Below are positions 4,394 to 39,833 of a stretch of 64,000 nucleotides of DNA, in pieces. Under the pieces are notes generated by a model, which was given only the letters and a program-made list of their open reading frames with translations, did no database searches and had not been told where the DNA came from. Position numbers and translations under genes: made by a program. Location of the stretch: IMG/VR virus record IMGVR_UViG_3300009093_000035, positions 184,580 through 248,579 of that record. One strand, 5' to 3'. Numbering within the stretch: the stretch's first letter is position 1; each line of letters begins with the position of its first letter.

Positions 4394-6028
4394 TCACAGT
4401 GCCGCAGCCGCCTCCTGAGCGGCGACCGGGGCCGGGGCCTTCTCTTCGAGAGAGACGGCCTCGATCTTCTTCACCCAGTGATCCTTGCCCGAGCCCTTGA
4501 CGAACTCGGTCATGAGGGTGAAGACCTCGTCGGAGAAGCCGCCGACGTTGAGGATGTCCTCACGCGTCGGAGCCTGGCGAGAACCGTTCGGCGCGAGGTC
4601 GATGCAGACCATCTTCGCCTTCGGGTTCCGAGCGCGGAGAGCCTCCCACTCGACCATCGCCGCCGTCGGAGACGACGTGTGGCCAGAGGTGTAGGCGTTG
4701 TGGACGACCTTCGTGTCCATCCACGACTCGTTGTCCGAGGCGTAGGTGACGGCGTCCACCTTCTCCTTGTTGTGGTTGAGCGCCCTCATCGGCGCCGAGC
4801 AGTTCGTCCCGCCCGGCGGGCAAGACGCGATCTGGTTCGCGATCGTCATGATCGAGTCCCGCGGGTTGAACCGAAGGTTGATCACGTTCTCCGTGAACGG
4901 GAGAACGATCGCGTCCGGGTTCCGACGCATGAGCGTCGCAGCGATCAGGGCCGCCACGTCACGGCAGGTGACCTTCGTCGCCATCTCGCGCTTCCCCGTG
5001 ACCGGAGACGCCATCGACCCGGAGACGTCCGGGAAGACTGCGATTCGACCCTCGAAGGCCGGAACGTTCTTCGTCGCGATCTCCATCGCGTCCTGGAGAG
5101 CGTTCTGGACCTCCATCGGGACACCCGAGGTGTTCCGGTAGGCGATCAGGAGCTGGTACGGGAAGACCCGAGCCTTCGCGATCGACTCCTCGTCGCGGAG
5201 CTTCGCAGCGATGATCTTCACCATCGCCTTGTCCTCGAAGACGCCGTGGCGGAGGAACGTGTTGAGGTTCATCCGCACCGTCTGCCACGAGGCCGAACGT
5301 GCCAGCTCGATCCACTGGGCCTTCGTCAGCTTCGTGTTCGTGAGCATCAGGAACGGCACGTCCGGGATCGGACGCGACGGATCCTTCTTCCACGCCTCGA
5401 ACTCACGAAGCAGCGGGTCCGCCTTCTCCAGGTCGAACTTCTTCCCCACGAGCCACGCGTAGGTCTCCTTCCGAGCGTCCGTCGCCGGCTTCGGGTGGAC
5501 CATCTTGATCACGTCCGCGATCGACGGCTTGTCGCCCGTCGCCCGGATCAGCTGAGCATCGGTGCGCGCAGCGAACCACGCCTCGACCATCTTCTTCGGA
5601 GCCGTCCCGAGGGACTTCCGGCCGACCTTCCCGGAGCGGATGATCTGGACGAAGTTCCGGACCATCTTCGGGTTGTCGAGGATCCGCGAGAACGACGCCC
5701 GAAGGGCCGCGATACCTGCCGGTCCCCGAGTCGTGAGGTGAGCCGCGAGGAGCGCCGGAGCGTCCTTCATGAAGGCGGACTTCCGCCCGTAGACGGCCGT
5801 CTTCGCGACGAACTCCGGAGAGACCTCGGCCGCAAGCTTCAGGATCGCGTCCAGCTGCTCCTCGTCCGACGTGTAGAACGTCGACCCGAGACAGCCGGTT
5901 GCGGTGTACTGAGCGAGGGCCTCCTTCGGGCCCGCCTTGTAGGCGAGACCGCCGGCCGCGTTGAACATGTCGGCGATCGGCGCGACGCGACCCGCCGGAG
6001 CGGACTTGAAAAGCTTCTTGTTTGCCAC
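4394..6028 (-). CDS. rsr: Ro60/Rsr TROVE-domain RNA-binding protein with C-terminal vWA domain
   Basis: Likely GTG start at 6028 (MANKKLFKS, preceded by AAGGGG); N.AGG.AY, FVAKTAVYGR, MVRNF, VRMNL, ARVFPYQL, MIDAS DVSGSM, GGTNCS, SDNESW, GGFSD. Confidence 0.92.
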   Translation of the reverse strand: MANKKLFKSAPAGRVAPIADMFNAAGGLAYKAGPKEALAQYTATGCLGSTFYTSDEEQLDAILKLAAEVSPEFVAKTAVYGRKSAFMKDAPALLAAHLTTRGPAGIAALRASFSRILDNPKMVRNFVQIIRSGKVGRKSLGTAPKKMVEAWFAARTDAQLIRATGDKPSIADVIKMVHPKPATDARKETYAWLVGKKFDLEKADPLLREFEAWKKDPSRPIPDVPFLMLTNTKLTKAQWIELARSASWQTVRMNLNTFLRHGVFEDKAMVKIIAAKLRDEESIAKARVFPYQLLIAYRNTSGVPMEVQNALQDAMEIATKNVPAFEGRIAVFPDVSGSMASPVTGKREMATKVTCRDVAALIAATLMRRNPDAIVLPFTENVINLRFNPRDSIMTIANQIASCPPGGTNCSAPMRALNHNKEKVDAVTYASDNESWMDTKVVHNAYTSGHTSSPTAAMVEWEALRARNPKAKMVCIDLAPNGSRQAPTREDILNVGGFSDEVFTLMTEFVKGSGKDHWVKKIEAVSLEEKAPAPVAAQEAAAAL

Positions 6029-6055
6029 GGTAACACCCCTTCGAACAAAGGAGGG

Positions 6056-6085
6056 CTCTGGCAACTGGATAGGAGTTCCTTCAGG
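6056..6085. repeat. Arm 1 of a 30-nt long-range inverted repeat (partner 14426-14455)
   Basis: Reverse complement CCTGAAGGAACTCCTATCCAGTTGCCAGAG matches 14426-14455 at 28/30. Confidence 0.9.
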
Positions 6086-6229
6086 AAGATTGAACGTGAG
6101 GTCGTTGACGACGAACGCTTGCGTAGAGCGTTGTCCGCGGAGGTTCAGGAGGCTGATCAATTCCTCCCGTAGGCAAGCCTACTTAGCACCAACGTAGAGC
6201 GTCGCCGACAACTCGGCCTGACCTCACGA

Positions 6230-6301
6230 AGCGGGTGGTGGGAATCGAACCCACGATCTTCGCGTTGGCAACGCGCTGCTCTACCGCTGAGCTACACCCG
6301 C
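6230..6301 (-). tRNA. tRNA-Gly(GCC)
   Basis: Cloverleaf; loop TTGCCAA. Confidence 0.9.
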
Positions 6302-6367
6302 AAAAGAAACTGAGACCCATAGCGACCCGACGTCCCGCGATTACCTCCTCCCCAAGGAGAAACGACC

Positions 6368-6772
6368 ATGGGACTTGATATGCAGCAGCCGTCCGTTGTT
6401 ACCGTCGATGACACCAGCATCGACGCCCTCTACGATGGGATCCCCGAGGATTGCGTCGTGGGGTACGTTCTGAGGGTAATCGCCGCCTCGGACGCTGGAT
6501 ACGCCCACTGGGAGAAACGATTCCTCGCTCGTCGCGTGGGGGAAAGCGAAGTGATCATCGACGGGATCTGCGACGTCTTCCCGCCCATCCTGAACGCCGG
6601 AGCTTCAGCCTGGGCGGTCGAGGTATGCGTCGACAACGGATACGTCTGTGTAGACGTCCAAGGCTCGGCTGATACCCAGGTCTTCTGGTTGGTCGATCTC
6701 CACGGAGACGAGATCCCCACGGTCTCCAACGACCGCATGAACCTGAGGACCTCTCGGCGACTCGCGAGATAG
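6368..6772 (+). CDS. Hypothetical beta-rich protein, paralog of 36891-37298
   Basis: AAGGAG SD; colinear similarity with the 36891-37298 product. Confidence 0.7.
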   Translation: MGLDMQQPSVVTVDDTSIDALYDGIPEDCVVGYVLRVIAASDAGYAHWEKRFLARRVGESEVIIDGICDVFPPILNAGASAWAVEVCVDNGYVCVDVQGSADTQVFWLVDLHGDEIPTVSNDRMNLRTSRRLAR

Positions 6773-6786
6773 ACCCTCGAAGAATC

Positions 6787-6903
6787 TGTCGAGCGAAGCC
6801 GAGGTCTGGAATCGAACCAGAGGGTAGCTCCGCGGAAGCTGGGGACCACCCCACAACGGAATCGAACCGTCTCCCTGCCAATGTCTCCCGATCTCGCTCG
6901 ACA
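6787..6903 (-). ncRNA. Structured RNA with two T-loop arms in a closed stem
   Basis: 10-bp closing stem TGTCGAGCGA/TCGCTCGACA; ACGG-TTCGATT-CCGT and TCTGG-TTCGATT-CCAGA. Confidence 0.6.
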
Positions 6904-6988
6904 CGGAGAGTTGAGGTCCCGCCCCTCATGCCCTTACGGGCACCCATTGTTTAGCAAACAAGGCTGGTCCTCGACCAGGTAACCCTCC
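6904..6988 (-). tRNA. tRNA-Ser(GCU), non-canonical 8/4 fold
   Basis: 8-bp acceptor GGAGGGTT/AACTCTCC, G73, 6-bp D stem, loop TTGCTAA, long V arm, 4-bp T stem GAGG-GGCGGGA-CCTC. Confidence 0.8.
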
Positions 6989-7023
6989 AAACACGTTACT
7001 AACGGACGCTCACGCGAACCGGA

Positions 7024-7110
7024 CGGAGAGTGAGGGACTCGAACCCCCGAGGGCCTCTCGACCCATGCCGGTGTTCAAAGCCGGTGCCTTAGCCGCTAGG
7101 CTAACCCTCC
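7024..7110 (-). tRNA. tRNA-Ser(UGA)
   Basis: Canonical 7/5 cloverleaf, long V arm, loop TTTGAAC. Confidence 0.9.
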
Positions 7111-7191
7111 AGGAGTCTGAGAAACCCGCGCTAATCGAAGACGCCCTTGCCTCTTCGGAGGCATGCTCGCCAGAGCTAGGTTTCCCAGACA

Positions 7192-7276
7192 CGGAAGCTG
7201 GAGGTCCCGACCCTCAGAGCCTTTCGACTCCCAACCGCTTTCGAGACGGTGCCGATCCCTGATCGGTTCAACTTCC
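7192..7276 (-). tRNA. tRNA-Ser(CGA), non-canonical 8/4 fold
   Basis: Acceptor GGAAGTTG/CAGCTTCC, D stem CCGATC/GATCGG, loop CTCGAAA, T arm GAGG-GTCGGGA-CCTC. Confidence 0.8.
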
Positions 7277-7384
7277 AATTCTACGTTCTGGCCCCGCCAC
7301 GGAGCCTAGACGACCAGGCAAACTGGCGGGTCGATTGGATGGAGACCTTTGCGTCTCGGATCCGTCGCAGGCCAGAACCTAGAG

Positions 7385-7469
7385 CGGAAAGGAAGGGTCC
7401 CGACCCCCAGACCCTTTCGAGTCCCAACCGCTTTCCAAGCGGTGCCGGCCCCTGGCCAGTTCCCTTTCC
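7385..7469 (-). tRNA. tRNA-Ser(GGA), non-canonical 8/4 fold
   Basis: Acceptor GGAAAGGG/TCCTTTCC, D stem CTGGCC/GGCCGG, loop TTGGAAA, T arm GGGG-GTCGGGA-CCCT. Confidence 0.8.
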
Positions 7470-7473
7470 AAAC

Positions 7474-7634
7474 AGCTCGCTCGTCTCAGCGTGTATAGCC
7501 ATCACACTTCATCATCGTCGTCGCTACTCGGATTCGAACCGAGTCTCCTGGGCTCTACCATAGCGTGGCGCCAGCCACTCTCGCTCCGATTCTGATGCAC
7601 GGATTCGAACCGTGAACTCTGAGACTCACGAACC
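7474..7634 (-). ncRNA. Double tRNA-elbow RNA (permuted tRNA module enclosing a second T-arm module)
   Basis: Closing GTCTCAG/CTGAGAC; T arm CACGG-TTCGAAT-CCGTG; CATCA/TGATG; D-like GTGT-GATGGCTAT-ACAC; inner GCTA..CTCGG-TTCGAAT-CCGAG-TAGC. Confidence 0.6.
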
Positions 7635-7651
7635 TTCGGGCTGCAGCCCTA

Positions 7652-7772
7652 CCCGGAACGCGGGATTCGAACCCGCCTGAAGGGAAGGGTTGCTAGACCT
7701 CCCCACCGCCGCCTTTCCCTGTCCTCTAGCGAACAGGTACAGACAGCCGCTCACCATCTGGCGTACTTCCGA
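7652..7772 (-). ncRNA. tRNA-like RNA with elongated anticodon and variable arms
   Basis: CGGAA/TTCCG acceptor, AGATGGT D-loop, GCGGG-TTCGAAT-CCCGC T arm; two long hairpins with complementary loops GCTAGA/TCTAGC. Confidence 0.55.
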
Positions 7773-7844
7773 TCGGGGTGACAGGGATCGAACCTGCGAT
7801 TTCTCGACCCCCAGCCGAGCGCGATACCACTTCGCTACACCCCG
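7773..7844 (-). tRNA. tRNA-Pro(GGG)
   Basis: Cloverleaf; CTCGG-CTGGGGG-TCGAG. Confidence 0.9.
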
Positions 7845-7897
7845 AAGAAACTAGAAGACCGAGGTCCTGGAGCCTTTCAACTCCAGGACCGATCAGG

Positions 7898-8446
7898 TCA
7901 GGACCCCTCTTCGATCGGAGCATTCCAGTACACGTAGGAGGCCCACGCGTCCGGGATGTTCGTCAACGAAAACCGCATGGTGACTACCGGGAGATACGCG
8001 GGCTTCACGGGCTGCTTGCGCAGCTTCATCCCCGCGCGCTCCGGAGTCCGGTCGGCCTTCTTCTCGTTGCACGAGTAGCAGGCCATCACGATGTTCTCCC
8101 AGGTCGTCCTACCGCCGTGAGAGCGGGGGGTGACGTGGTCGTACGTGAGCTTCGAGAGCGGGAGCTTCCCGGTACCCGGAGGGCAGTACTGACAGGTGAA
8201 GTTGTCCCGCGTCGCTACGTTCACCCGAGAGAACTTCACGGCCTGCTTCTTGCCGCGGATCCTCCCGAGGAGACGAACGACGGCCGGCATCTTGAAGGAG
8301 AGGGTCACGTGGATTTCCTCGTTGTACTCCTCCACTACCTCGGCGACGTTGTCGAGGACCATACACACGGCCCTCTGCCAGTCCACGATCCTGTGGGGTA
8401 CCCACCCCTGATCCAATACGAGAGTTGTTTGCACGGCCTTACCCAC
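7898..8446 (-). CDS. HNH endonuclease (McrA-like)
   Basis: RDNFTCQYC, LTYDHVTPRSHGGRTTWENIVMACYSCNEKK; type often found in tRNA arrays. Confidence 0.92.
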   Translation of the reverse strand: MGKAVQTTLVLDQGWVPHRIVDWQRAVCMVLDNVAEVVEEYNEEIHVTLSFKMPAVVRLLGRIRGKKQAVKFSRVNVATRDNFTCQYCPPGTGKLPLSKLTYDHVTPRSHGGRTTWENIVMACYSCNEKKADRTPERAGMKLRKQPVKPAYLPVVTMRFSLTNIPDAWASYVYWNAPIEEGS

Positions 8447-8469
8447 CTTTCCTGAGCTGTTGTTTTGGT

Positions 8470-8552
8470 TGCGAGAGGAGGGAGTCGAACCCTCACGCCC
8501 CGAAGGGCACCGATTTTTGAGACCGGCGCGTCTGCCATTCCGCCACTCTCGC
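8470..8552 (-). tRNA. tRNA-Leu(CAA)
   Basis: Cloverleaf, V arm; loop CTCAAAA. Confidence 0.92.
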
Positions 8553-8578
8553 GTCTACTGAAACTTACTCGAAAGGGA

Positions 8579-8664
8579 TGCCCGGGGGGAGAGTCGAACT
8601 CCCACGACCGCTAGGATCGCCGCCTTCTGAGGACGGTGTGTCTACCAAGTTCCACCACCCGGGC
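8579..8664 (-). tRNA. tRNA-Leu(CAG)
   Basis: Loop CTCAGAA, V arm. Confidence 0.92.
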
Positions 8665-8680
8665 TCAAAAACCTACTCAC

Positions 8681-8762
8681 TGCGGAAGAGGGGACTTGAA
8701 CCCCTACGCCACAAGGACACTGGAACCTAAACCCAGCGCGTCTGCCATTCCGCCACTTCCGC
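8681..8762 (-). tRNA. tRNA-Leu(UAG)
   Basis: Loop TTTAGGT, V arm. Confidence 0.92.
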
Positions 8763-8768
8763 TCTACA

Positions 8769-8851
8769 TGGGGACGGGGGGACTTGAACCCCCACGTCAC
8801 GAAGGACACTAGCACCTCAAGCTAGCGCGTCTGCCTTTCCGCCACGTCCCC
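8769..8851 (-). tRNA. tRNA-Leu(GAG)
   Basis: Loop TTGAGGT, V arm. Confidence 0.92.
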
Positions 8852-8868
8852 ATTACGAATCGAACCAG

Positions 8869-8954
8869 TGCTCGGGGGGAGAGTCGAACTCCCATGACCG
8901 CGAAGGATCGTTGGATTCTTAGTCCAGTGTGTCTGCCAGTTCCACCACCCGAGC
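8869..8954 (-). tRNA. tRNA-Leu(AAG)
   Basis: Loop CTAAGAA, Leu-type D and V arms. Confidence 0.85.
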
Positions 8955-9030
8955 GTACGAACCGAAGATTGTCCAAGATCGAGAGGGGCCCTCCGAGGAA
9001 TCCCTCGGGGGCTGATCCTCCCGTCCGGTA

Positions 9031-9107: not shown

Positions 9108-9199
9108 TGGACCTACCTGGACTCGAACCAGGTCAATCGCCGCTCGACCACCCCAGGTTTTCCTTGCTGTGAGGCGATTACGTCACTGAGGTTAGGCCC
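9108..9199 (-). ncRNA. Mini-tmRNA-like RNA (tRNA-like domain only)
   Basis: Acceptor GGGCCTA/TAGGTCC with G3.U70 and A73, stemless D region, helix AATCGCC/GGCGATT, GA then CCTGG-TTCGAGT-CCAGG. Confidence 0.6.
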
Positions 9200-9375: not shown

Positions 9376-9521
9376 GTCAGGCTCGTCTCGACCCGCGGCC
9401 CCCGAGAGGGCGGAACCCCATCAGGACCATCACTACCGCCACCGGGGGCCAGAGGATGGACTCGACTGCGAGACGAACACGTACTTTGAAGGGCATCCCC
9501 TACCCTACTCGAAGAAACCAA

Positions 9522-9593
9522 TCGGGGTGACAGGGATCGAACCTGCGATCTCACCGTCCCGAACGGTGCGCGATACCACTTCGCTACACCCCG
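9522..9593 (-). tRNA. tRNA-Pro(CGG)
   Basis: CACCG-TTCGGGA-CGGTG. Confidence 0.92.
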
Positions 9594-9769
9594 ATAAATC
9601 GTACTTCGGCGGGTCTCTCACCCCGCATCCTTCCAGGTCCGGATTCCCGTCCGTCTACGCGGCCTTGTACCGCTCCCTCGCTGCTTGTCGTCAGCGGCCC
9701 TGTACGATCGTTCACGAGAAGGGTTCGCCCCGACGCTGCAGACGCCGAGACTACTTTTCCGACTCGCTA

Positions 9770-12239: not shown

Positions 12240-12371
12240 CGGGTGACAAGAGCGGAGAAGACGTTTTTTGGACTGCCGCTCTACCATCTGAGCTACCACC
12301 CCCTTTCGGAGACGGGCGGGACTCGAACCCGCGACCCGCAGTGTTGTTGTAGTCCTATTCCAATTCACCCG
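12240..12371 (-). ncRNA. Y RNA-like #2 (YrlA-type, permuted tRNA module)
   Basis: CGGGUGAAU..GACUACA / CUUGUCACCCG; T arm GCGGG-TTCGAGT-CCCGC, GAAA-capped acceptor, then D arm TAGCTCAGATGGTAGAGC. Confidence 0.85.
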
Positions 12372-12449: not shown

Positions 12450-12588
12450 TTGCGAGAGAGGGACTTGAACCCCCACGAGCGCTTCCGTTACTTCCCTGGG
12501 AAGCGCTTCCCGTACGGGTTTCACGGATGGGCCTAGGACCCTGTCTCTCCGAGTCGCCTCGGCGCGTCTGCCATTTCGCCATCTCGCA
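12450..12588 (-). ncRNA. Anticodon-less oversized tRNA-Leu mimic A
   Basis: Acceptor TGCGAGA/TCTCGCA, Leu D arm GGCGAAATGGCAGACGC, anticodon arm capped by GCGA, three hairpins in the variable region, normal T arm. Confidence 0.7.
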
Positions 12589-12596
12589 TCGAACAC

Positions 12597-12748
12597 TAGG
12601 GAGAAGGGGAATCGAACCCCCACCGGGCTCTACAGGACTCTCCGCGGTTCGCGACCCTCGGATCCTCCCGTTGGCTCGGGGTGCGCACCCCTTACCGTCC
12701 CTGCCGGAACTTTCATCCCGGTGCGTCTACCAGTTCCGCCATCTCCCG
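12597..12748 (-). ncRNA. Anticodon-less oversized tRNA-Leu mimic B
   Basis: Leu D arm GGCGGAACTGGTAGACGC, CCGGGAT-GAAA-GTTCCGG, ~80-nt structured variable region, normal T arm. Confidence 0.7.
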
Positions 12749-12770
12749 TCAACGAACGGAAGGAAAAGTT

Positions 12771-12903
12771 TGGGCGACAAGTGTTGGCGAAGATCTTTTC
12801 GTCGCTCTACCAACTGAGCTACCGCCCCGTGAAAGTGGGGCGGGCTGGACTCGAACCAGCGGCCTCCGGCTTGAAATGCTGTAATCCTCTCCGAATTCAC
12901 CCA
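12771..12903 (-). ncRNA. Y RNA-like #3 (YrlA-type)
   Basis: UGGGUGAAU..GAUUACA / CUUGUCGCCCA; GCTGG-TTCGAGT-CCAGC, closed acceptor CCGCCCC/GGGGCGG, D arm TAGCTCAGTTGGTAGAGC. Confidence 0.85.
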
Positions 12904-13390: not shown

Positions 13391-13514
13391 CGTGCGACAA
13401 GAGTGACAGCGACGTTTTCTAGGCCCGAGCCTCGCTCCCTTTCGGGAACGACCAGGATTCGAACCTGGCTCGATTGTTGTTCATACAATGTAGTCCCCAT
13501 CGAGTATTCGCACG
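13391..13514 (-). ncRNA. Y RNA-like #5 (T arm plus GAAA-closed acceptor, degenerate D arm)
   Basis: CGUGCGAAU..GACUACA / CUUGUCGCACG; CCAGG-TTCGAAT-CCTGG; TCGTTCCC-GAAA-GGGAGCGA. Confidence 0.8.
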
Positions 13515-14796: not shown

Positions 14797-14879
14797 TGGA
14801 GACGCCAGGAATCGAACCTGATTTCCTCCGAAGAGGGGCGGGGTTACAGTCCGCCTACGAGGCCACTCGTATCATCTCC
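14797..14879 (-). tRNA. tRNA-Tyr(GUA)
   Basis: Loop CTGTAAC, V arm. Confidence 0.8.
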
Positions 14880-16646: not shown

Positions 16647-17855
16647 ATGACCCAGATCACCAGCTCGAAGTCGGTCGCCCTCATGAAGTTCCTCTCGGCC
16701 CTCGCCCGAAAGCTCGGGGTAGGGGCTCACGTCTACGTCGTGGGTGGGGCCGTCCGGAACTTCCTCATGGGACAGCCGGTGAAGGACCTCGACGTCGTGA
16801 TCGACTCGATCGCCCTCGGAGAAGGTCGAGACAGCGCCTGGTTCGCGTCCAACGTTCTGGAGGCGATCCCCGAGTGGTCCAACCTCACGACGAACCAGTA
16901 CGGGGTCGCGATCCTCACGGTGAAGGGACCCTGGGTCCTCGACGGCTTCTCCATGGAGGGGGAAGTGATCGAGATCGCCAACGCTCGGAAGGAGTCCTAC
17001 GGGTCCTCGGGCGGGAAAGGGAAGGGCTACAAGCCCACCGACGTCCAGCCCTCCACGATCGAGGAGGACATCTACCGGCGCGAGTTCACGTTCAACACCT
17101 TGCTGTGGCGCCTCGAAGACGTTGCGGAAGGACCGGAAGGGGCTCCGGTGATCGACATCACGGGGCTCGGCCTCACCCACCTCAAAGAGAAGCTGATCCA
17201 AACGCCTCTCGATCCGGACCGGACGTTCTCCGACGACCCGACGAGGATGCTCCGGGCGATCAAGTTCCTCATGCGCTACGACCTCCGCCTCTCCGAAGAG
17301 GTCGAGCGGTCGATCATGAAGAACGCCTCGAAGATGACCCAGATGCCTTGGGAGGCGGTCGCTACGATCCTCGTCCGTGACATCCTCTCGCTCCCCAGCG
17401 CGAAGGAAGCTCTCTTCCGGATGATGGGGCTCGGGCTCGTTCGAGTTCTGAAGGGGATGGTCCAGGACCAGCCTCCCTTCGCCTCGTACATGGCGGGTCA
17501 GTTCGGCTCGGGCGAGGCGGACCTGAAGCTTCTCGTCCTCATGGATGACCTCGGGCTCGGAGGACGCGCGTTCAGCTTCCTCTCCCCGGCCCAGAAGGTT
17601 CGCTTCAAGGCTCTGGTCGTCGGGGCCGAGGACGAGTGGGTCCGGAAGCTCTACACGCTTCTCCAGAAGCCCCCGATCCGATCTCTGGCTCTGTTCGCGG
17701 ACTTCGGCCTCGAAGGGAAGGCGCGGTCAGCCCCCGCGATCTTCGCCCGAGAGGCGATCCTCGAAGACCTCTCGTTGGTCGAAGAGCCGGAACGGATCGA
17801 AGCGGTCGTACGGGAGATGCTCGGGGGGATTCCGCCGGCCCCTCCCGCCCCCTAG
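16647..17855 (+). CDS. cca: Class II CCA-adding tRNA nucleotidyltransferase / poly(A) polymerase family
   Basis: YVVGGAVRN..DLDVV, IEIANARKESY, EDIYRREFTFN, FSDDPTRMLRAIKF; tRNAs here lack encoded CCA. Confidence 0.85.
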   Translation: MTQITSSKSVALMKFLSALARKLGVGAHVYVVGGAVRNFLMGQPVKDLDVVIDSIALGEGRDSAWFASNVLEAIPEWSNLTTNQYGVAILTVKGPWVLDGFSMEGEVIEIANARKESYGSSGGKGKGYKPTDVQPSTIEEDIYRREFTFNTLLWRLEDVAEGPEGAPVIDITGLGLTHLKEKLIQTPLDPDRTFSDDPTRMLRAIKFLMRYDLRLSEEVERSIMKNASKMTQMPWEAVATILVRDILSLPSAKEALFRMMGLGLVRVLKGMVQDQPPFASYMAGQFGSGEADLKLLVLMDDLGLGGRAFSFLSPAQKVRFKALVVGAEDEWVRKLYTLLQKPPIRSLALFADFGLEGKARSAPAIFAREAILEDLSLVEEPERIEAVVREMLGGIPPAPPAP

Positions 17856-39757: not shown

Positions 39758-39833
39758 TGGGTCCGACCGGATTCGAACCGGTACATGTCCGTTTATGAGA
39801 CGGGGGTTCTGGAACCTGTTGAACTACGGACCC
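39758..39833 (-). tRNA. Solitary tRNA(CAU), Ile2 or elongator Met
   Basis: Acceptor GGGTCCG/CGGACCC, loop CTCATAA, T arm ACCGG-TTCGAAT-CCGGT. Confidence 0.85.

What the first reader, a model, noticed from the sequence alone, without database searches (positions are those of the whole stretch)
7474..7634. Double-elbow RNA: a permuted tRNA module whose acceptor encloses a second T-arm module
Seen: order is closing stem, T arm, acceptor strand, insert, acceptor strand, D arm with GG, closing stem (YrlA topology). The insert holds GCTA..TGGTAGAGC..T arm..TAGC. The Ro-type GAAU/UUGUC ends are absent. Inference: a bivalent tRNA-elbow scaffold.
Basis: seen in the sequence. Interest (0 to 1): 0.65.

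Follow-up and report, generated by a model that had tools for sequence, protein, structure and literature searches.

The report
Nested tRNA-like RNA in phage tRNA array
The flagged stretch encodes, on the minus strand, a real and conserved ~165-nt structured RNA of Ro60-carrying giant soil phages: a non-decoding tRNA-shaped core clamped inside a second four-way junction, which only in this phage also looks like a permuted tRNA.

Summary

It is not chance. Six homologues in other giant-phage contigs keep the same eight helices. In them 92% of pair cells are paired, against 28-43% for slid controls, and 38 of 54 pairs show changes on both sides.

- The insert is a complete tRNA-like cloverleaf with its own acceptor helix, a hairpin with a UGG loop, a short non-anticodon hairpin and a T arm. 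It is probably derived from tRNA-Pro.
- The outer T loop and the GG-containing D loop occur only in this phage. All six relatives carry U(A/C)GGAG and GUGC(U/A) loops at those places, so the "double elbow" is specific to this lineage.
- The Ro-type end motif is indeed absent, but a Ro60 gene lies 1.3 kb downstream on the same strand, and two YrlA-like RNAs with that motif lie elsewhere in the array.

No Rfam family matches. Function is untested. My best guess is a Y-RNA-like modular tRNA mimic. I rate it a new variant of a known kind, of moderate interest.

The parts
7471..7637 (-). Whole RNA as modelled (~165 nt), including the conserved GAA 5' flank and GUU 3' flank
   Evidence: Covariance models R1 and R2 score it at 151.7 and 124.7 bits. 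There is one copy in the 248-kb record.
7619..7634 (-). P1, 5' strand: 7 bp, a GA internal loop, then 7 bp. The motif GGUUCGU(G/A)AG is conserved in 5 of 7 members.
   Evidence: MFE fold. 10 of the 14 pairs show changes on both sides. Alignment.
7474..7489 (-). P1, 3' strand
7598..7614 (-). H1: here a canonical T arm (5 bp, loop UUCGAAU). In all relatives it is a 6-7 bp hairpin with loop U(A/C)GGAG.
   Evidence: The helix covaries, with 5 of 7 pairs changed on both sides. Loop difference shown.
7593..7597 (-). P2, 5' strand (outer acceptor-like helix). It abuts the T arm with no linker, as in a tRNA.
   Evidence: The equivalent helix in relatives covaries (helix 3), but in the window it is shifted by about 3 nt.
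7510..7514 (-). P2, 3' strand
7583..7589 (-). P3, 5' strand: acceptor helix of the inner tRNA-like module. In the window it contains a tandem G-A/A-G.
   Evidence: Helix 4 has 5 of 6 pairs changed on both sides.
7518..7524 (-). P3, 3' strand. It lies within UAGCGACGA, which is identical in the window and three of the six relatives (one substitution in L022; diverged in L011 and L029).
7565..7578 (-). Inner D-position hairpin with a UGG-containing 4-5 nt loop. GG is present in all 7 members.
   Evidence: (helix 5)
7547..7563 (-). Inner hairpin at the anticodon position. It is weak here (3 bp). In relatives it has 4-6 bp with 5-8 nt loops, mostly YAAGW, so it is not an anticodon loop.
   Evidence: (helix 6)
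7527..7543 (-). Inner T arm (loop UUCGAAU; UUCAACU in most relatives)
   Evidence: (helix 7)
7491..7507 (-). HD: D-position hairpin. Here it has a 4-bp stem and a 9-nt loop containing GG. In relatives the stem is the invariant GUGU/ACAC with loop GUGC(U/A).
   Evidence: (helix 8, invariant stem)
7638..7649 (-). Small palindromic spacer hairpin just upstream. It is conserved, with changed bases, in L012.
4394..6160 (-). Ro60/Rsr homologue (TROVE + vWA_Ro60), 1.3 kb downstream on the same strand

Best explanation
The stretch encodes a stable, non-decoding tRNA-mimic RNA of about 165 nt that belongs to a small family found in giant phages that encode Ro60.

Architecture (shown). A terminal helix formed by the 5' and 3' ends opens into a four-way junction: H1, P2, HD and the closing helix. 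P2 continues, across a small bulge, into the acceptor helix of a complete tRNA-like cloverleaf. That cloverleaf has a conserved T loop and a GG loop, but no usable anticodon loop.

In this phage the outer junction has additionally taken on tRNA geometry:
- a canonical T arm that abuts P2 directly;
- a 2-nt linker at positions 8-9;
- a GG-containing D-like loop;
- nucleotides in the positions of G26 and A44.
So here it reads as a permuted, YrlA-type tRNA module carrying a second tRNA-like module.

Mechanism (inferred). The RNA is co-transcribed with the tRNA array and released when RNase P and 3'-end processing cut its tRNA neighbours; the next tRNA-like gene starts 4-5 nt after its 3' end. It then works like a Y RNA. 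The terminal helix, with its conserved 5' strand, is a protein-docking site, and the phage Ro60 is the obvious candidate. The rigid junction presents the tRNA-like head to tRNA-binding factors.

I read the conserved H1 and HD loops of the relatives, and the T/D loops here, as two alternative ways of locking those hairpins together.
For: Reality and architecture:
- MFE fold, z = -2.45.
- Homologues at 33-181 bits in six other phage contigs.
- 92.3% of pair cells are paired, against 28-43% for slid controls; 38 of 54 pairs change on both sides; 0 of 500 shuffles reach the observed values.
- An independent MAFFT + RNAalifold run recovers P1, H1, P3 and all three inner arms.

tRNA-likeness of the inner module:
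- Model positions ~51-120 also pick up genuine tRNAs, with Pro isoacceptors prominent among them.
- ARAGORN calls the L016 copy a tRNA.

Not decoding: the loops at the anticodon position are 5-8 nt and variable.

Context:
- Same strand as, and 1.3 kb upstream of, Ro60.
- Two YrlA-like RNAs in the same array.
- No promoter or terminator nearby on that strand.
- Directly after tRNA-Pro(GGG) in 5 of 7 members and near it in a sixth: in the window the 130-nt element X (7640-7770) lies between tRNA-Pro(GGG) and the RNA.

Link to Ro60: the one member found by an RNA word search rather than through Ro60 (G001, 363 kb) also encodes a Ro60, only 42% identical to this one, and a YrlA-like RNA.

Outer module: its loops are the best-conserved part of the family, so the flanks are not a mere leader and trailer.
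Against: - No expression or end-mapping data. Only DNA runs from rhizosphere metagenomes hold the sequence.
- The published Ro60-recognition motif (GNCGAAN0-1G, or CGAA; PMC4201824, PMC12135203) is absent. The conserved 5' strand GGUUCGU(G/A)AG only resembles it, and is not kept in the two most distant members.
- At least seven related Ro60-encoding loci lack the RNA within the 1-10 kb of upstream sequence that each locus holds (only about 1.1 kb in L010), including one whose Ro60 is almost identical to that of a carrier (L010 against L019). So the RNA is dispensable for Ro60.
- Six of the seven members were found through Ro60, which biases the co-occurrence.
- The alignment used for the pair counts was fitted to the model.
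Confidence: 0.55

Rival explanations
1. Nested precursor. RNase P and a 3' endonuclease excise the inner cloverleaf, and the CCA-adding enzyme finishes it into a small tRNA-like RNA, as happens for mascRNA. The outer part is mainly a processing scaffold. Alternatively the outer part survives as a two-piece split tRNA-like RNA, like the RNase P-cleaved YrlA of M. smegmatis.
For: - The inner module has a 6-7 bp acceptor helix stacked on a 5-6 bp T stem, starts with C and ends with G then A, as bacterial tRNA-Pro does.
- P2 is a leader-trailer helix like the one described for MALAT1/mascRNA (PMC8457004, title and abstract seen).
- M. smegmatis YrlA is cut by RNase P and receives CCA (PMC4201824).
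- The window encodes a nucleotidyltransferase of the CCA-adding/poly(A) polymerase family at 16647-17855.
Against: - The strongest sequence conservation lies in the outer hairpin loops, not in the inner module.
- P1 and P2 covary strongly, which is more than a disposable leader and trailer needs.
- A base-paired leader disfavours RNase P (general knowledge, not tested here).
- No CCA is encoded and no reads are available.
Confidence: 0.25
2. One reading: a bivalent scaffold that presents two tRNA elbows at once to two elbow-binding partners.
For: In this phage both modules have a canonical T loop and a GG-containing partner loop. The outer junction has tRNA-exact linker lengths.
Against: - The outer T and D loops are absent from all six relatives.
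- They look derived on the Ro60 tree.
- The outer D loop is not canonical: there is no A14, and A stands in place of U8.
- The outer T arm is 15 of 17 identical to the inner one and may simply be a copy of it.
Confidence: 0.1
3. Non-functional debris: decayed or rearranged tRNA genes in a recombining tRNA array, whose apparent nesting has no role.
For: The neighbourhood is full of odd tRNA-like pieces and has been rearranged relative to relatives. The RNA is missing from many relatives.
Against: Long-range helices are kept by compensatory changes between phages whose Ro60 proteins are only 42% identical. The loop motifs are conserved across GC contents of 49-61%.
Confidence: 0.05

Closest known systems
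YrlA (bacterial and phage Y RNA with a tRNA-like domain; Rfam RF02553; PMC4201824)
   Same: - A terminal helix is formed by the two ends.
- The order of elements is permuted: T-position hairpin, acceptor-like helix, D-position hairpin.
- It is encoded close to, and on the same strand as, Ro60, inside a phage tRNA array.
- In this window it has a canonical T loop and a GG-containing D-like loop.
   Different: - No Rfam hit, and no GNCGAAN0-1G motif.
- The acceptor-like helix is not capped by a loop but carries a whole second cloverleaf.
- In relatives the outer loops are not tRNA-like at all.
- Genuine YrlA-like RNAs coexist in the same array (12768-12903 and 12252-12371).
RNase P-processed YrlA of Mycobacterium smegmatis (PMC4201824)
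   Same: A tRNA-like module whose acceptor helix could be opened by RNase P, giving two base-paired halves. A CCA-adding-type enzyme is encoded nearby.
   Different: Processing is untested here. The outer acceptor-like helix has only 5 bp.
mascRNA/menRNA tRNA-like small RNAs with a leader-trailer helix (Rfam RF01684; PMC8457004)
   Same: A tRNA-like cloverleaf with a reduced anticodon arm, and an acceptor helix prolonged by leader-trailer pairing.
   Different: Those are eukaryotic nuclear lncRNA products. The Rfam score here is only 18.7 bits against a threshold of 42.5. There is no evidence of excision.
Ordinary tRNA-Pro genes of the same arrays
   Same: The inner module aligns to them with models R1 and R2, starts C...G-A as they do, and in most members sits directly behind tRNA-Pro(GGG).
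   Different: It has no 7-nt anticodon loop, a short D loop on a long stem, an acceptor end buried in P2, and no Rfam tRNA hit in the window.

Membership tests
YrlA (RF02553) | Scores at or above the Rfam gathering threshold (69 bits) | tested here: not met
   No YrlA match at 7474-7634 even at E <= 10. Two other places in the array score 51.3 and 39.9 bits.
YrlA (RF02553) | GNCGAAN0-1G motif near the 5' end (the likely Ro60 contact) | tested here: not met
   The 5' strand reads GGUUCGUGAG. Relatives have GGUUCGU(G/A)AG, GUUCGGAAAG, or unrelated sequence.
YrlA (RF02553) | Order of elements: closing stem, T arm, acceptor-like stem, D arm, closing stem | tested here: met
   Met in the window. 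In relatives the helices are kept but the T and D loop sequences are not.
YrlA (RF02553) | Within 4 kb of Ro60 and on the same strand | tested here: met
   Ro60 lies at 4394-6160 on the minus strand; the RNA lies at 7474-7634 on the minus strand.
Y RNA (functional definition) | Bound by Ro60 | not testable with these tools
   Needs EMSA or co-immunoprecipitation.
tRNA (RF00005), inner module | Cloverleaf with a 7-bp acceptor stem, D arm, 5-bp anticodon stem with a 7-nt loop (U33, purine 37), and T arm | tested here: not met
   The acceptor, D-position and T arms are present and covary. The loop at the anticodon position is 5-8 nt and non-canonical. There is no Rfam tRNA hit in the window. ARAGORN calls only the L016 copy, and that copy has C33 and U37.
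Permuted tRNA genes (Cyanidioschyzon type), outer module | After permutation, a complete decoding tRNA with an anticodon loop | tested here: not met
   The stem at the anticodon position is a 16-position helix that ends in the free 5' and 3' ends, so there is no anticodon loop.
mascRNA-menRNA (RF01684) | Rfam gathering score of 42.5 bits | tested here: not met
   18.7 bits in the window and 23.3 bits in L016.

The most novel reading that the evidence does not exclude
The RNA is a nested double tRNA mimic. The tRNA-processing enzymes cut out the inner CCA-tailed mini-tRNA and leave a two-piece, permuted tRNA-like RNA held together by P1 and P2. One locus would then yield two different tRNA decoys or adaptors: one free, and one docked on the phage Ro60 RNP. 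This phage would have independently re-evolved a tRNA elbow in place of the family's own loop-loop lock.
Probability: 0.1. Interest if true: 0.8.

Novelty: new variant of a known kind. Interest (0 to 1): 0.55.

Why it matters
Phage tRNA arrays are usually annotated as tRNAs plus gaps. This gap holds a conserved, covariation-supported RNA that no Rfam model detects, and it sits beside a phage Ro60 gene and YrlA-like RNAs.

It extends the known forms of tRNA mimicry: a cloverleaf clamped inside a second four-way junction.

It also offers a natural experiment. The family's own conserved loop pair is replaced, in this one phage, by a T loop and a GG loop, and this can test whether the two solutions are structurally equivalent.

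If the RNA binds Ro60, it would show that phage Ro60 RNPs use partners outside the YrlA consensus.

Tried and rejected
- **Rfam** on the window, on the region, and on three relatives: nothing for this RNA beyond weak mascRNA noise.
- **Megablast of 6000-9000 against GenBank phages**: only generic tRNA matches.
- **Exact 36-mer of the inner module in IMG/VR**: no hit.
- **Gapped pattern AAGGTTCGTGAG...TAGCGAC in IMG/VR**: besides L012, two chance matches inside coding sequence of unrelated phages (L014, L015).
- **Signature word TGAGGTGTGTGCNACAC:**
  - IMG/VR gave one new member (G001/L029) and one chance match (L025).
Among the 80 loci returned, only two contigs passed the model: L054 is the same contig as L016 (named identically), and L104 matches at a score identical to L019 and may be a duplicate (not checked).
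  - All 45 matches in the species-representative prokaryote genomes failed the model.
- **Ro60-guided loci** L010, L017, L018, L021, L150, L151, L152 and L153 hold no member. L020 has too little upstream sequence to tell.
- **Donor tRNA for the window's outer T or D arm:** none found in the 248-kb record or in relatives. The nearest match to the outer T arm is the RNA's own inner T arm.
- **Full-length model hit around tRNA-Pro(CGG)** (9472-9649, 25 bits): on inspection it is a tRNA with loosely fitting flanks, not a paralogue.
- **Sequencing runs:** only DNA metagenomes (rhizosphere, soil, wastewater). Contigs of the other runs do not cover 7462-7713, so this gave no information on expression or variants.
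- **RtcB** is absent from the record.
- **Not attempted:**
  - No test of the outer module with the insert removed. That would need a constructed sequence with no reference.
  - No protein-RNA complex prediction, because the tool takes proteins only.

Full report
**Setting**

The window is the last 64 kb of a 248,579-base IMG/VR virus record, estimated at 56% complete. A protein identical to its Ro60 sits on a 472,929-base contig, so the phage is very large.

Positions 3.8-15 kb hold a dense array of 45 tRNA genes (a 46th, tRNA-Met, lies apart at 39758-39833) plus a tmRNA, all on the minus strand. Any tRNA-like feature here therefore has to be read on the minus strand.

Other features in or beside the array:
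- a Ro60/Rsr homologue (TROVE + vWA_Ro60) at 4394-6160 on the minus strand;
- an HNH endonuclease at 7898-8446 on the minus strand;
- a nucleotidyltransferase of the CCA-adding/poly(A) polymerase family at 16647-17855 on the plus strand.

There is no RtcB in the record.

Two places in the array match Rfam YrlA below threshold: 12768-12903 at 51 bits and 12252-12371 at 40 bits. Both show the full permuted tRNA-like layout and the 5' motif GGGUGAAU, and the stronger also has the 3' motif CUUGUC.

**The observation**

On the minus strand, 7634->7474 has an MFE fold of -62 kcal/mol (z = -2.45). In order it shows:
- a terminal helix of 7 + 7 bp around a tandem GA/GA loop;
- four unpaired nucleotides;
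- a canonical T arm (7614-7598);
- directly after it, a 5-bp helix whose partner strand lies 79 nt downstream;
- two A residues;
- a 4-bp hairpin with a 9-nt loop containing GG (7507-7491);
- one G;
- the closing strand.

That is tRNA geometry, circularly permuted, which is the YrlA layout described in PMC4201824. Between the two strands of the 5-bp helix lies a 78-nt insert with a second canonical T arm (7543-7527).

The Ro-type ends are absent, and no Rfam family matches the stretch.

**Homologues**

Using the Ro60 protein as a handle, I fetched related phage loci. All of them have syntenic tRNA arrays.

BLAST found a 68%-identical stretch in L012, directly behind tRNA-Pro(GGG), and a further one in L016. 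A covariance model built from these three then found members in:
- L019;
- L022 (identical to L023);
- L011, a diverged member at 60 bits;
- L029, in a 363-kb contig of 49% GC, found through a conserved 17-nt word and scoring 33 bits with R1.

A second model built from all seven finds one copy per record and no paralogues.

In L012, L016, L019, L022 and L011 the RNA directly follows tRNA-Pro(GGG). In the window the 130-nt element X (7640-7770) separates the two. In L029 the RNA lies between two tRNA-Leu genes.

The family is missing from at least seven other Ro60 loci. One of these, L010, has a Ro60 nearly identical to that of the carrier L019. L010 lacks a block that in L019 holds an ORF, tRNA-Pro(GGG) and the RNA.

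None of the 45 matches to the signature word in species-representative prokaryote genomes passes the model.

**Structure**

On the seven-sequence alignment, 92.3% of pair cells are standard pairs, against 28-43% when the 3' partners are slid by 1-3 columns. 38 of 54 pairs show changes on both sides, and 0 of 500 shuffles reach any of the observed measures. Seven of the eight helices carry several compensatory changes; the eighth (HD) never varies.

That alignment was fitted to the model, so I repeated the analysis with plain MAFFT + RNAalifold. It recovers P1, H1, P3 and the three inner arms, with 28 of 47 pairs compensatory.

The consensus has these parts:
- P1, the terminal helix with its internal loop.
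- A four-way junction of P1, H1, P2 and HD.
- P2 continuing, across a 1-nt bulge, into P3.
- P3 closing a second four-way junction.

That second junction is a cloverleaf:
- an acceptor helix;
- a D-position hairpin whose small loop always contains GG;
- a hairpin at the anticodon position;
- a T arm with loop UUCAACU or UUCGAAU.

Model positions 51-120 on their own pick up genuine tRNAs, with Pro isoacceptors prominent. ARAGORN even calls the L016 copy a tRNA.

The loop at the anticodon position is 5-8 nt, mostly YAAGW, and in most members lacks the canonical U33/purine-37 pattern. The module therefore cannot decode. The inner module starts with C and ends G-A, as bacterial tRNA-Pro does. Together with its position behind tRNA-Pro(GGG), this suggests that it derives from a tRNA-Pro gene (inference).

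**What is special about this window**

In all six relatives:
- the H1 loop is U(A/C)GGAG;
- HD is an invariant GUGU/ACAC stem with loop GUGC(U/A), preceded by UGAGG;
- the linkers are 3 nt (H1 to P2) and 5 nt (P2 to HD).

These outer elements are the best-conserved letters of the whole family, kept even in the two distant members.

Only the window has a T loop in H1, a GG-containing 9-nt loop in HD, and tRNA-exact linkers (0 nt; AA; G at the position of 26; A at the position of 44).

On a Ro60 tree the window is nested among lineages that carry the family-type loops: L022 is in its own well-supported clade and L016 is in the sister clade. The tRNA-like outer loops are therefore most simply read as derived, provided the RNA followed the Ro60 tree.

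I found no donor tRNA for them. The outer T arm is 15 of 17 identical to the RNA's own inner T arm, and the two differences keep the pair, which suggests an internal copy.

The co-replacement of both loops is the most intriguing point. It is what one would expect if H1 and HD touch each other and either loop pair can make that contact. This is inference and has not been tested.

- The insert is not closed by GCTA/TAGC. That pairing is not conserved. The conserved closure is 7589-7583 with 7524-7518, which in the window contains a tandem G-A/A-G.
- The string TGGTAGAGC is not the insert's D arm. It lies in the weak arm at the anticodon position. The D-position hairpin is 7578-7565.

**How it probably works**

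Shown: the architecture, its conservation, the strand, and the context.

Inferred: no promoter or terminator consensus lies nearby on the minus strand, and the next tRNA-like gene starts 4-5 nt after the RNA's 3' end. The RNA is therefore probably cut out of the array transcript when its neighbours are processed.

The design matches that of Y RNAs: a terminal helix with a conserved 5' strand at an internal loop, then a rigid junction, then a tRNA-like head (PMC4201824; PMC12135203).

All seven carriers encode Ro60. This includes the one found independently of Ro60, whose Ro60 is only 42% identical to this one and which also has a YrlA-like RNA.

I therefore favour a Y-RNA-like scaffold or tRNA mimic, with Ro60 as the candidate partner. 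I put roughly 0.9 on the statement that this is a real structured RNA with this architecture, and roughly 0.3-0.4 on the Ro60-partner mechanism.

Against it:
- The published Ro60 motif is absent.
- The conserved 5' strand is lost in the two distant members.
- Many Ro60 phages lack the RNA.

The main rival is that the inner cloverleaf is excised, as mascRNA is, or that the RNA is opened by RNase P, as M. smegmatis YrlA is. The strong conservation of the outer loops argues that the outer module is more than a leader and trailer.

**Known or new**

No Rfam 15 family matches any member. Three full-text literature searches found YrlA and phage Yrl papers but nothing describing this architecture. 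That is a limited search.

The RNA fails the tests for YrlA membership (score and motif) while sharing YrlA's topology and genomic context. I file it as a new variant of the known kind "tRNA-like / Y-like non-coding RNA of Ro60 loci".

**Limits**

- Seven sequences, six of them found through Ro60.
- No transcript data: only DNA metagenome runs from rhizosphere, soil and wastewater hold the sequence, and their contigs do not cover the RNA.
- The metagenome word scan was truncated.
- E-values from the short calibration are rough.

Noticed in passing
window 12768-12903 (-) and 12252-12371 (-): Two YrlA-like RNAs that score below the Rfam threshold (51.3 and 39.9 bits). Both have the full permuted T arm / acceptor / D arm layout and the 5' motif GGGUGAAU. 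They lie in gaps of the tRNA array, 6-7 kb from the Ro60 gene. They are probably the cognate Y RNAs of this phage.
   Followed up: partly
window 7385-7469 (-), 7192-7276 (-), 6904-6988 (-): Three class-II tRNA-Ser-like genes (anticodons GGA, CGA, GCU) that ARAGORN and Rfam tRNA miss. They have an unusual T loop (G-UCGGGAC-C or GCGGGAC instead of UUCRANY) and a long D stem. Equivalents are conserved in L010, L012, L016 and L019, where some of them are called tRNA-Ser.
   Followed up: partly
window 7640-7770 (-): Element X, a 130-nt element with a canonical T arm (7660-7676). It lies between tRNA-Pro(GGG) and the RNA and is absent from L012 and L016. It folds into several hairpins but is not a recognisable tRNA (tRNA-Sec model 14 bits). 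Its 3' part aligns with the 3' end of tRNA-Pro in L012.
   Followed up: partly
window 6786-6905 (-); also L011:7661-7790, L012:9411-9530, L016:3062-3185: Further RNAs with two T arms inside one closing stem. In the window, T arms at 6855-6871 and 6805-6821 lie within a 9-bp closing stem (fold z = -1.2). Relatives have a conserved element with two T arms between a 7-8 bp end helix. I did not establish whether the window element and that element are homologous.
   Followed up: partly
window 14805-14821, 13452-13468, 12605-12621, 12458-12474, 9116-9132 (all -): Orphan canonical T arms (perfect 5-bp stem, UUCRANN loop) outside any ARAGORN tRNA. The array holds more unannotated tRNA-like elements.
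   Followed up: no
L010 against L019 (loci of relatives): Two phages with nearly identical Ro60 differ by a block holding a 208-aa ORF, tRNA-Pro(GGG) and the RNA. The RNA may travel with tRNA-Pro(GGG) as an accessory cassette.
   Followed up: partly
L018:4111-4187: ARAGORN calls a tRNA with anticodon UUA (reads the UAA stop codon) inside the Leu block of a related phage. It is a possible suppressor tRNA.
   Followed up: no
L152 (JGI contig, 68 kb): A Ro60 71% identical to the phage protein sits among bacterial-looking genes (Ser/Thr kinase, MarR, MFS transporter, methyltransferases). It groups inside the phage Ro60 clade on the tree. This is a lead to the host or to a phage-bacterium transfer.
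   Followed up: no
window 4394-6160 (-) / protein P0001: The identical Ro60 protein is recorded on a 472,929-base contig. The phage genome is probably near or above 470 kb, and the IMG/VR record is a fragment.
   Followed up: no
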